DNA of 61,484 bases, the filler included, from Bipalium vagum (lineage: Eukaryota): assembly GCA_037834085.1 (NCBI GenBank). It is 3 parts of 3 records of this genome, joined end to end, with 100 filler letters (N's around TTAATTAATTAA, not from the genome) between each part and the next. Parts side by side here need not be neighbours in the genome. Positions count along the whole stretch, not along the records: positions 1 to 26,806 come from JBBMKC010128561.1; 2 more parts are not named here. One strand, given 5' to 3'. Shown here piece after piece: positions 264 through 676 of the stretch. Numbering within the stretch: the stretch's first letter is position 1; each line of letters opens with the position of its first letter. A program made the position numbers and the translations under genes. Under the pieces are notes generated by a model. It made no database searches, was not told the origin of the DNA, and was given only the letters and a program-made list of their open reading frames with translations.

Positions 264-676
264 AAATAAATACTCAGGCCAGTACCTGAGTATCATATAA
301 CTTTTTACTTTCTCATTTCTTTTTCCGTTTTTATTTTAGTTGTTAACTCACACGCTAAGTAGGGCGGTGAGTTAAATTGTTTTTCTTAATTGAGGGCCTC
401 TGAGCCTAAGAGCGAGAGGACTTTTTAACCCCAAAATTAAAATTTAACCCTAAAATAAAAACTATTGAAATCCATCAAGAACGATCATCCGCATTTGTAA
501 AATAAAGTCCATCTTTTATTAAAAAATAAAATTTTGAAAATTTGAATTCTTCTTGGTTACTTACATTAGATTTTTATATTTAAAAGTTTTTAACCCCAAT
601 AATAAAAGCAACCTTCGCCTTTAAGTCCTAATAACCATTGTTTTTAGCTCCACCTTTTATAAATTAGGATCATAAC
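264..676 (-). repeat. Structured repeat module, copy A (four stem-loops; putative retroelement 3' UTR RNA structure)
   Basis: Shares blocks with 19745-20136: ATACTCAGGCCAGwACCTGAG, CTAAGTAGGG, CCTCTsAGCCTAAGAGCGAGAGGA, AAGCAACCTTC, AGCTCCAC, TTAGGATC. Strand is inferred from the adjacent integrase remnant. Confidence 0.85.

What the first reader, a model, noticed from the sequence alone, without database searches (positions are those of the whole stretch)
264..676. Multi-hairpin structured RNA module with compensatory covariation, present twice (264-676 and 19745-20136)
Seen: two direct-orientation copies 19.5 kb apart have diverged AT-rich linkers but keep four stem-loops in the same order. 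H1 is ATACTCAGG-CCAGwA-CCTGAGkAT (270-293 / 19751-19774). H2 is TTAACTCAC-A-CGC-TAAGTAGG-GCG-GTGAGTTAA (343-375) versus TACTTAAC-A-CAC-TAAGTAGG-GTG-GTGAAGTA (19827-19857), with three compensatory pair changes (A346-T372 to C-G, C347-G371 to T-A, G354-C365 to A-T), an invariant bulged A and an invariant 8-nt loop. H3 is CCTCTs-A-GC-CTAAGA-GC-GAGAGG (397-419 / 19880-19902). The H4 stem CCTAAT/ATTAGG becomes CCTAAG/CTTAGG (a fourth compensatory change) and encloses an invariant AGCTCCAC, preceded by an invariant AAGCAACCTTC. Inference: covariation with conserved loops indicates selection on an RNA (or ssDNA) structure. I do not recognise it as tRNA, snRNA, rRNA, RNase P/MRP or a hammerhead/HDV ribozyme, so it may be an undescribed cis-acting structured RNA family.
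Basis: partly seen in the sequence, partly recalled or inferred. Interest (0 to 1): 0.8.

Follow-up and report, generated by a model that had tools for sequence, protein, structure and literature searches.

The report
Hairpin-rich tail of retrotransposon LTRs
The two "structured RNA modules" are the last 400-530 bases of two long terminal repeats (LTRs) of a very abundant Ty3/gypsy-type retrotransposon. Their hairpins do show real compensatory evolution, most likely as leader-RNA signals of the element, so this is an ordinary mobile element and not a new RNA gene.

Summary
The conserved H3 block occurs 2,177 times in this 440 Mb AT-rich animal genome.

Copy B is the 3' end of a 1,772-bp solo LTR (window 18366-20137). 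It has TG...CA ends and a perfect 4-bp target-site duplication (ATAC). Copy A (about 151-677) is the 3' part of an LTR of a sister family and is cut by the contig start.

Genome-wide, the LTR 5' end is preceded by a fixed polypurine tract (64 hits). The LTR 3' end is followed by TT plus a tRNA-Trp-type primer-binding site (253 hits). Protease and integrase lie upstream of the polypurine tract. The element is therefore a CsRn1-like Ty3/gypsy retrotransposon, with its sense strand on the window's + strand.

- **H2:** covaries at four pairs across at least five LTR subfamilies, and G·U intermediates are common.
- **H4:** is really a 13-bp inverted repeat ending at the LTR terminus, 2 nt before the primer-binding site. 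It resembles the retroviral U5-IR stem and covaries at two pairs.
- **H1:** has two compensatory variants.
- **H3:** is a conserved sequence with no structural support.

The likely function is cis-acting leader-RNA signals for priming, packaging and polyadenylation. No RNA data were available. Novelty is low.

The parts
18366..20137 (+). Complete solo LTR, family B (1,772 bp), running 5'-TGTGGAGACT...GGATCTTAACA-3'.
   Evidence: Full-length relatives at 80-85% identity. Ends and length. There is no polypurine tract before it and no primer-binding site after it.
18362..18365 (.). Left target-site duplication, ATAC.
   Evidence: Identical 4-mer at 20138-20141. Of 13 full-length copies, 9 have an exact 4-bp duplication and 4 match at 3 of 4 bases.
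20138..20141 (.). Right target-site duplication, ATAC.
151..677 (+). It ends at the LTR terminus ...GGATCATAACA. The 5' ~1 kb is missing at the contig start.
   Evidence: Matches positions ~1053-1490 of 1,490-bp and 1,616-bp family-A LTRs and other copies from window ~151. The right boundary is sharp in 30 of 30 copies. No primer-binding site follows.
256..269 (+). Conserved AATAAA-rich block directly before H1. It is a candidate poly(A) signal or a TATA-like box. Copy B: 19737-19750.
   Evidence: Columns at least 90% conserved in 59 copies. Function is inferred only.
270..293 (+). H1 hairpin of copy A (9 bp, 6-nt loop).
   Evidence: Folds at -12.5 kcal/mol, z -5.3. Compensatory C-G to U-A in 4 copies, and G-C to A-U in L085.
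19751..19774 (+). H1 hairpin of copy B.
   Evidence: Folds at -9.3 kcal/mol, z -3.9.
343..375 (+). H2 hairpin of copy A: 9-bp lower stem, bulged A, 3-4-bp upper stem, conserved loop.
   Evidence: Folds at -17 kcal/mol, z -6.0. Covariation at four pairs across at least five subfamilies.
19827..19857 (+). H2 hairpin of copy B. It carries a private C-to-A change at 19832 that breaks one pair.
   Evidence: (19832 A>C in 24 contigs).
397..419 (+). H3 block of copy A: a highly conserved sequence and only a weak hairpin.
   Evidence: 2,177 genomic matches within 2 mismatches against 0 for the control. Fold z -0.8. No covariation.
19880..19902 (+). H3 block of copy B.
   Evidence: This region gives the highest summed contig depth in run X1.
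620..632 (+). 5' arm of the extended H4 (U5-IR-like stem), copy A.
   Evidence: Pairs with 663-676.
663..676 (+). 3' arm of the extended H4, copy A. It overlaps the LTR terminus.
20070..20082 (+). 5' arm of the extended H4, copy B (GTTAAGACCTAAG).
   Evidence: 13 bp with one bulge, -13 kcal/mol, z -3.7. Pair 7 is AU 16 / UA 10 / GU 10 and pair 13 is GC 21 / UA 20.
20123..20136 (+). 3' arm of the extended H4, copy B (CTTAGGATCTTAAC), ending 1 nt before the LTR end.

Best explanation
Both modules are the 3' 400-530 bp of LTRs from two sister families (A and B) of a CsRn1-like Ty3/gypsy LTR retrotransposon. The genome holds at least 2,000 LTR copies of this element.

Copy B is a solo LTR left by LTR-LTR recombination. 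Copy A is an LTR cut by the contig edge. The element's sense strand is the window's + strand.

In full-length copies this part of the LTR runs straight into the spacer TT and then a 15-nt primer-binding site for a tRNA-Trp-type tRNA. H2, H3 and H4 are therefore transcribed as the 5' leader of the element's genomic RNA. Transcription start and poly(A) sites are not mapped.

The hairpins are kept by selection on the few master copies that give rise to new insertions. Inserted copies then decay.

Inferred roles, with my odds:
- H4 is the counterpart of the retroviral U5-IR stem. It presents the primer-binding site for initiation of reverse transcription (about 0.5).
- H2, with its invariant purine-rich loop and bulged A, is a Gag/nucleocapsid-binding packaging or dimerisation signal (about 0.35).
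- H1 follows the conserved AATAAA block and precedes a U/GU-rich tract, so it modulates polyadenylation or sits in the core promoter (about 0.3 each).
- H3 is a conserved sequence element with an unknown partner.
For: Shown:
- The repeat is high-copy: 1,907 and 3,754 first-look candidates, and 40 or more scored copies at 77-94% identity.
- LTR ends are TG...CA, with 4-bp target-site duplications in 13 of 13 full-length copies (9 exact).
- Ten purines followed by TGTGGAGACT occur 64 times, against 0-2 for the control. Almost all hits are the same tract, GAGGGAGAAA.
- The mirror test on the other end gave only 2 hits. This fixes the orientation.
- CTTAACA+TT+TGGTGAGC occurs 253 times, against 0-3 for the control. 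A family-B LTR carries it in L048.
- The primer-binding site is complementary to a T-arm/acceptor end, GTTCGAATCACGTCGGGCTCA, found twice in the genome.
- It matches the published CsRn1-clade tRNA-Trp site TGGTGA(G/C)CCCG(T/A), and that clade also makes 4-bp duplications (PMC2582038).
- Protease, Integrase_H2C2 (E 9.5e-22) and rve lie upstream of the polypurine tract in L087.

Covariation:
- On 59 copies, 85.5% of cells are paired, against 37-44% when partners are slid.
- 81 cells show double changes, against 37.6±7.7 in shuffles (0 of 500 shuffles reach it).
- A genome-wide sample of H2 shows further pair states at the same positions: U-A/U-A, A-U/U-A, and an outer A-U versus G-C pair. There are many U·G intermediates and almost no C·A.
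- H4 pairs 7 and 13 covary.

Background: conserved stem-loops in R/U5 and U5-IR-type stems next to the primer-binding site are established features of retroelements (PMC3601003; PMC4974528; Lin & Levin 1998 as cited in PMC4600332).
Against: - No RNA data exist. The only public run that holds the stretch is DNA-like. The transcription start, the poly(A) site, and so the R/U5 borders and the presence of H1 in the 5' leader are all unknown.
- No contig with two LTRs around one internal region was recovered.
- Reverse transcriptase itself was not seen in this genome's loci.
- Covariation rests on a handful of subfamily-level events, not on many independent lineages. RNAalifold on decayed copies predicts no consensus structure.
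- H3 has no structural support.
- The module was not found in JGI metagenome contigs, so there is no cross-species test.
- The functional roles of individual hairpins are assigned by analogy only.
Confidence: 0.85

Rival explanations
1. The hairpins matter as double-stranded DNA palindromes in the LTR promoter or enhancer, or as integrase-end sites. In this reading they bind transcription-factor or integrase dimers and are not RNA structures.
For: H1 is a near-perfect palindrome between a TATA-like AATAAATA block and a possible initiator. The 3' arm of H4 overlaps the integrase-recognition end of the LTR (end motifs in PMC3601003). H3 is conserved as sequence only.
Against: Compensatory changes keep pairing but alter the sequence read by a protein. 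U·G and G·U states are common at subfamily level, whereas the C·A states that the opposite strand would require are rare. The H2 loop and bulge are asymmetric and not palindromic.
Confidence: 0.12
2. The apparent covariation has no function. It reflects a few linked substitutions inherited by large subfamilies plus chance.
For: Only about 5-6 subfamily-level haplotypes underlie the counts. The shuffle control ignores relatedness (tool note). RNAalifold gives no consensus structure. Measures that count pairs or pair types are not above the shuffles (138/500 and 179/500).
Against: Six separate pairs in H2 and H4 change while staying Watson-Crick or wobble. Two of those positions have three different standard pairs. 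Slid-partner controls give 3-11 double-change cells against 81 observed. Single copies fold far better than shuffles (z down to -6).
Confidence: 0.08
3. The module is a free-standing or host cis-regulatory structured RNA family, only coincidentally embedded in repeats.
For: Conserved loops and compensatory stems. No Rfam match, so it is not a described family.
Against: Every one of 58 sampled copies ends at the same LTR terminus with unique flanks. The module always sits at a fixed distance from that terminus. In full-length elements it is followed by a primer-binding site. The copy number is in the thousands. Neither window copy has a consistent relation to a host gene.
Confidence: 0.02
4. 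The repeat is a non-autonomous DNA transposon (for example Ginger-like, with TGT...ACA ends and 4-bp duplications), a SINE or a Helitron, and not an LTR.
For: All 58 sampled copies are stand-alone units with unique flanks on both sides. They have 4-bp duplications and TGT...ACA ends, as Ginger elements have (from my own knowledge).
Against: There are no terminal inverted repeats beyond about 9 imperfect bases. Polypurine-tract and primer-binding-site junctions are strongly enriched, and in one orientation only. Integrase and protease lie next to the polypurine tract. There is no poly(A) or A/B boxes, and no Helitron CTRR end.
Confidence: 0.02

Closest known systems
CsRn1 clade of Ty3/gypsy LTR retrotransposons (CsRn1, PwRn1, AgCR-1 to -14, Kabuki, Gulliver)
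   Same: The primer-binding site TGGTGAGCCCGA fits the clade's published tRNA-Trp site TGGTGA(G/C)CCCG(T/A). Target-site duplications are 4 bp. A polypurine tract lies directly before the 3' LTR (PMC2582038). The LTR 5' end TGTGGAG is close to the clade motif TGTGGYG (PMC3601003).
   Different: The LTRs here are 1.5-1.8 kb, against about 330-470 bp in described members. The 3' end CTTAACA fits the clade motif MSYYAMA at only 5 of 7 positions. An extra conserved ORF3 lies between integrase and the polypurine tract, whereas the clade is described as lacking env-like ORFs. The Gag CHCC motif and the pol phylogeny were not tested.
Retroviral U5-IR stem-loop (avian sarcoma/leukosis viruses, also primed by tRNA-Trp) and its Tf1 counterpart
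   Same: It is an inverted repeat inside U5 whose 3' arm ends next to the primer-binding site. Here the stem is 13 bp and ends 3 nt before the site. The family-level substitutions in it are compensatory.
   Different: The loop here is 30-41 nt. No experiment links the stem to initiation of reverse transcription. The similarity is positional and not in sequence. My knowledge of the avian virus stem is from memory, plus the title of Lin & Levin 1998 (seen).
Leader and R-region hairpins of retroviruses and Ty elements (TAR and poly(A) hairpins, packaging stem-loops, the Ty1 pseudoknot)
   Same: These are several independent stem-loops in the first few hundred nucleotides of the genomic RNA, upstream of or around the primer-binding site. 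They carry signals for packaging, dimerisation and priming (PMC4974528). Residual conservation in R is linked to stem-loops (PMC3601003).
   Different: There is no sequence or Rfam similarity. The H2 loop is not palindromic, so it is not an obvious kissing-loop dimerisation site.

Membership tests
LTR of an LTR retrotransposon | Ends 5'-TG...CA-3' with short imperfect inverted repeats | tested here: met
   TGTGGAGACT...CTTAACA in the window copy and in 13 full-length copies.
LTR of an LTR retrotransposon | Fixed-length (4-6 bp) target-site duplication | tested here: met
   4 bp: 9 exact and 4 matching at 3 of 4 bases, out of 13. The window copy has ATAC on both sides.
LTR of an LTR retrotransposon | Polypurine tract abutting the LTR 5' end in full-length copies | tested here: met
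   64 hits against 0-2 for the control, mostly GAGGGAGAAA|TGTGGAGACT. The opposite orientation gave 2 hits.
LTR of an LTR retrotransposon | tRNA primer-binding site just after the LTR 3' end | tested here: met
   CTTAACA TT TGGTGAGC occurs 253 times against 0-3 for the control. L048 shows a family-B LTR followed by the site. The complementary tRNA-like 3' end is present twice in the genome.
LTR of an LTR retrotransposon | Internal gag-pol with protease, reverse transcriptase/RNase H and integrase | tested here: inconclusive
   Protease, Integrase_H2C2 and rve lie upstream of the polypurine tract in L087, which is a deleted copy. Reverse transcriptase was not seen in this genome's loci. The full domain set was seen only in a metagenome relative that shares ORF3.
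LTR of an LTR retrotransposon | Two matching LTRs flanking one internal region | tested here: inconclusive
   No such contig is among the loci fetched.
CsRn1 clade (Ty3/gypsy) | tRNA-Trp primer-binding site TGGTGA(G/C)CCCG(T/A) | tested here: met
   TGGTGAGCCCGACGT in L048, compared with the motif in PMC2582038.
CsRn1 clade (Ty3/gypsy) | Gag with the unusual CHCC motif | not tested
   No intact gag linked to these LTRs was recovered.
CsRn1 clade (Ty3/gypsy) | Pol (RT/RH/IN) groups with CsRn1 in a phylogeny | not tested
   Only integrase and protease fragments were available.
CsRn1 clade (Ty3/gypsy) | LTR end motifs TGTGGYG ... MSYYAMA | tested here: inconclusive
   TGTGGAG matches 6 of 7 positions and CTTAACA matches 5 of 7 (Table 3, compared).
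Any Rfam RNA family (including hammerhead, HDV and other ribozymes) | Covariance-model match at or near the gathering score | tested here: not met
   cmscan at E<=1 over 1-26806 on both strands gave only two weak hits, both elsewhere (14710-14744 and 21988-22091).
U5-IR-type stem | Inverted repeat within U5 ending next to the primer-binding site and conserved by compensatory change | tested here: met
   13 bp. Pair 7 is AU 16 / UA 10 / GU 10 and pair 13 is GC 21 / UA 20. Fold z -3.7 in copy B.
U5-IR-type stem | Required for initiation of reverse transcription | not testable with these tools
   This needs biochemical or genetic assays.

The most novel reading that the evidence does not exclude
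H2, H3 and H4 form a lineage-specific leader-RNA module of a CsRn1-like retrotransposon group that has unusually long LTRs. In this reading the invariant H2 loop and the ultra-conserved H3 block are the Gag recognition (packaging) signal, and H4 is a U5-IR equivalent for tRNA-Trp priming. This would be the first defined packaging and priming RNA structure for this metazoan gypsy clade. It could perhaps be linked to the clade's unusual CHCC Gag and to the exonuclease-like ORF3 seen in relatives.
Probability: 0.3. Interest if true: 0.4.

Novelty: new member of a known kind. Interest (0 to 1): 0.22.

Why it matters
For the scan, this finding should be removed from the list of candidate new RNA classes. 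It is transposon sequence, and similar 'covarying multi-hairpin repeats' elsewhere in this genome will mostly be the same LTR superfamily.

For transposon biology it offers a modest gain. It is a clean natural example of compensatory evolution between LTR subfamilies. It marks an H2 hairpin and a U5-IR-like stem next to a tRNA-Trp primer-binding site in a poorly studied metazoan gypsy clade. These are ready targets for SHAPE and Gag-binding experiments.

Tried and rejected
- **tRNA genes and Rfam.** A tRNA scan and Rfam at E<=1 found nothing at the finding.
- **SINE, MITE, Helitron or Ginger readings.** I considered these because all 58 sampled copies have unique flanks. I rejected them on the orientation-specific polypurine-tract and primer-binding-site junction counts and on the lack of terminal inverted repeats.
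- **RNAalifold.** On 59 decayed copies it returned an empty structure, so I counted pairs on an explicit structure instead.
- **RNA evidence.** The only listed run is not RNA. Laying it showed single-copy flanks at about 21x and a large excess over the LTR. This indicates copy number and says nothing about expression.
- **tRNA-Trp pattern from memory.** A pattern that included the anticodon arm found nothing, because it was over-specified. A shorter T-arm/acceptor pattern found 2 sites.
- **Cross-species search.** H3 and H2 gave 0 hits in JGI metagenome contigs.

Full report
**What is in the sequence**

The window is one contig (C128561) of a 440 Mb, 272,664-contig, AT-rich genome; the window itself is about 26% GC. 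It has no long ORFs and no tRNA genes.

- Kinase exons of the pyruvate-dehydrogenase-kinase type lie on the minus strand at 2843-3181 and 7168-7611.
- A mariner transposase remnant lies at 9739-10224.
- A LINE reverse-transcriptase remnant lies at 23892-24197 (read by eye).

The genome is therefore an animal nuclear genome.

The blocks are conserved in the same order and direct orientation, with about 74% identity overall, and the intervening sequence has diverged.

**It is a high-copy repeat**

- A search of the organism's own genome with 250-680 gave 1,907 first-look candidates. All 40 scored matches were 80-100% identical.
- A search with 18300-20400 gave 3,754 candidates. It showed that copy B is the end of a ~1.78 kb unit.
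- All-against-all comparison of 58 fetched loci shows a ~170-bp core (H1 to H3) shared by every locus.
- That core is followed by a ~230-bp family-specific tail, and similarity drops sharply to zero at one common right end.
- The H3 block alone occurs 2,177 times within two mismatches, against 0 for the control.
- The 9-nt H2 loop with its flanks gave 1,845 pattern matches. Of the first 100 listed, 78 are recognisable H2 hairpins.
- In the one public run that holds the stretch (DNA-like), the flanks sit at about 21x. The LTR rises to hundreds, and to hundreds of thousands over H3. That figure is summed contig depth and is not a copy number.

**It is an LTR, and the sense strand is the window's + strand**

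- Full-length units begin TGTGGAGACT and end ...CTTAACA.
- They are flanked by 4-bp target-site duplications in 13 of 13 cases (9 exact and 4 at 3 of 4 bases).
- The window's copy B is 18366-20137, with ATAC on both sides.

I then asked whether either end abuts the priming sites of a retroelement.

- Ten purines followed by TGTGGAGACT occur 64 times, against 0-2 for the reversed control. Nearly all have the same tract, GAGGGAGAAA.
- The mirror-image test at the other end gave 2 hits.
- The 3' end followed by TT and TGGTGAGC occurs 253 times, against 0-3 for the control.
- In L048 a family-B LTR, 91% identical to the window copy over its tail, runs into TT TGGTGAGCCCGACGT.
- The reverse complement of that site, joined to a canonical T-loop (GTTCGAATCACGTCGGGCTCA), occurs twice in the genome, as expected for a tRNA gene.
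- Upstream of the polypurine tract, L087 encodes a retroviral-type protease, an Integrase_H2C2 domain (E 9.5e-22) and an rve core.

The primer-binding site fits the published tRNA-Trp site of the CsRn1 clade, TGGTGA(G/C)CCCG(T/A). That clade also makes 4-bp duplications (PMC2582038). Its LTR 5' motif, TGTGGYG, is one base from ours (PMC3601003).

Copy A (about 151-677) matches only the last ~440-530 bp of 1,490-1,616-bp family-A LTRs. The remainder falls off the contig start. No primer-binding site follows it, so it is either a solo LTR or a 3' LTR.

**Are the hairpins more than inherited sequence?**

*Folding.* Single copies of H1 and H2 fold much better than shuffles (z -3.9 to -6.0). H3 does not (z -0.8 and -1.8).

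*Pair counts.* On an alignment of 59 copies with an explicit structure:
- 85.5% of cells are standard pairs, against 37-44% when the partners are slid.
- 81 cells carry changes on both sides, against 37.6±7.7 in shuffles and 3-11 in the slid controls.
- Three H2 pairs differ between families A and B while staying Watson-Crick: AU/CG, UA/CG and AU/GC.

*Genome-wide sample of H2.* This adds subfamilies that the window does not represent.
- The commonest type, 17 identical rows of the first 100, has U-A/U-A at the two variable lower-stem pairs.
- Another type has A-U/U-A.
- The outermost pair is A-U in one type and G-C in another (for example C5837, C7286, C13097), with G·U in between.
- One position thus shows three different Watson-Crick pairs.
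- By my count of the listed rows, U·G states number about 15 against one C·A state. This asymmetry is expected for an RNA, or another single strand, of the + sense, which is the element's sense strand.

*H1.* It has two compensatory variants. C-G becomes U-A in four family-B copies, and G-C becomes A-U in a third family in L085. L076 has only the 5'-arm change (CTCAGA...CCTGAG).

GTTAAG-N-CCTAAK pairs with MTTAGG-A-NCTTAAC, making 13 bp, and the 3' arm ends one base before the LTR terminus. Pair 13 is GC 21 / UA 20. Pair 7 is AU 16 / UA 10 / GU 10 / UU 15.

*Caveats.*
- These are a handful of subfamily-level events inherited by many copies.
- The shuffle control ignores relatedness.
- RNAalifold on the decayed copies predicts nothing.
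- No other species carries the module in the collections I could search.

**How it most likely works**

*Shown:* the module is the part of the LTR that lies immediately 5' of the primer-binding site in full-length elements.

*Inferred:* with any transcription start upstream of H2, the hairpins H2 to H4 sit in the 5' leader of the genomic RNA. In retroviruses and Ty elements that region carries the signals for priming, packaging and dimerisation (PMC4974528). Residual LTR conservation has been tied to stem-loops (PMC3601003).

- **H4** matches the U5-IR stem in position. That stem is needed for initiation of reverse transcription in retroviruses and in Tf1 (title of Lin & Levin 1998, seen; the avian virus details are from memory).
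- **H2**, with its invariant purine-rich loop and bulged A, is my candidate for a Gag/nucleocapsid binding site.
- **H1** follows a more than 90% conserved AATAAA-rich block and precedes a T/GT-rich tract. This is the usual layout of a poly(A) site. The same block could instead be a TATA-like box with a start near ATCAT. I cannot tell which without RNA data.
- **H3** is the most conserved block but is conserved as sequence only.

**Comparison and novelty**

This is a new family, or group of families, of a known kind of element. It differs from described CsRn1-like elements in three ways:
- the LTRs are 1.5-1.8 kb, against roughly 0.3-0.5 kb;
- the 3' end motif is different;
- there is an ORF3.

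Clade membership by pol phylogeny and by the Gag CHCC motif is untested. The hairpin module itself is not described anywhere I could search, but it is the kind of feature expected in a retroelement leader.

**Side observation**

Between integrase and the polypurine tract, relatives carry ORFs with no Pfam match. These ORFs are conserved between diverged families at 40-58% identity.
- Only nine relatives exist among 1.84 billion representative proteins.
- One of them sits directly after a gag-pol ORF on a soil-metagenome contig, with the same 3' hairpin and polypurine-tract layout.
- A moderate-confidence model (pLDDT 60 overall, core 70-90) matches DEDD exonucleases: ISG20, ISG20L2, Pan2, RNase T, SDN1 and REXO2. 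This agrees with a language-model lead.
- Exonuclease ORF3s of the DEDDy type are known in bdelloid rotifer LTR elements (PMC5408684). This one looks like the ISG20/REX4 type, and its catalytic motifs are not obviously intact.

**Verdict**

The feature is an ordinary LTR with real, modestly interesting leader-RNA covariation. Interest is low.

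Noticed in passing
L080:1585-2514 (-), L077:2534-2974 (-), L066:2-493 (+); relative P0001 on L088:8001-9758: A conserved ORF3 lies between integrase and the polypurine tract in full-length relatives. 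It has no Pfam hit and only 9 relatives among 1.84 billion representative proteins. The predicted fold matches DEDD exonucleases of the ISG20/Pan2/RNase T type, but the catalytic motifs are not clearly kept. DEDDy-type ORF3s are known in bdelloid rotifer LTR elements (PMC5408684).
   Followed up: partly
L061-L087, the 30-45 nt before each GAGGGAGAAA|TGTGGAGACT junction (for example L087:9290-9337): A conserved inverted repeat, ACTTTTG-GGGA-CAAAAGT, lies just upstream of the polypurine tract in several otherwise diverged families. The metagenome relative L088:9722-9740 has it too. PPT-associated hairpins have been noted for Sire elements and HIV (PMC3601003 discussion).
   Followed up: no
window 647-654 and 20094-20101 versus the LTR 5' end at 18367-18375: The invariant AGCTCCAC in the H4 loop is complementary to GTGGAG(A)CT at the very start of the LTR, next to the polypurine tract. 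This could be a 5'-3' long-range contact in the genomic RNA, or only an echo of the terminal inverted repeat. It was not tested.
   Followed up: no
window 19871-19947: Summed contig depth in run X1 is about 335,000 over the H3 block, against 4,000-35,000 over its neighbours and about 21 in the flanks. H3 is therefore shared by many more, and more diverged, LTR families than the rest of the module.
   Followed up: partly
window 19159-19287: There are three imperfect tandem units of about 33-55 bp (...CTACGATCAA...GAATCT...) in the U3 part of LTR-B. Similar units occur in the variable middle part of other copies. This may explain the LTR length variation of 1.3-1.9 kb.
   Followed up: no
L076:809-1000: This is a nested insertion. 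Another element of the same superfamily, in reverse orientation, has inserted into the H2 loop of an LTR.
   Followed up: no
L085:3787-4197 and L085:5572-7293: A third LTR family (C) carries the same module. About 1.4 kb downstream lies a 573-aa ORF with no Pfam hit whose N-terminal half looks gag-like. The sequence after this LTR (..AACA ATATAAC TGGTAG..) is not the tRNA-Trp site.
   Followed up: no
window 2843-3181 (-), 7168-7611 (-), 9739-10224 (+), 23892-24197 (-): Host kinase exons of the PDK/BCKDK type, a mariner transposase remnant and a LINE reverse-transcriptase remnant. Read by eye from the ORF translations and not searched.
   Followed up: no
window 14710-14744 and 21988-22091: Weak sub-threshold Rfam hits: REN-SRE at 25.3 bits (E 0.026) and snoU6-53 at 23 bits (E 0.59). 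Both are most likely chance matches in AT-rich sequence.
   Followed up: no
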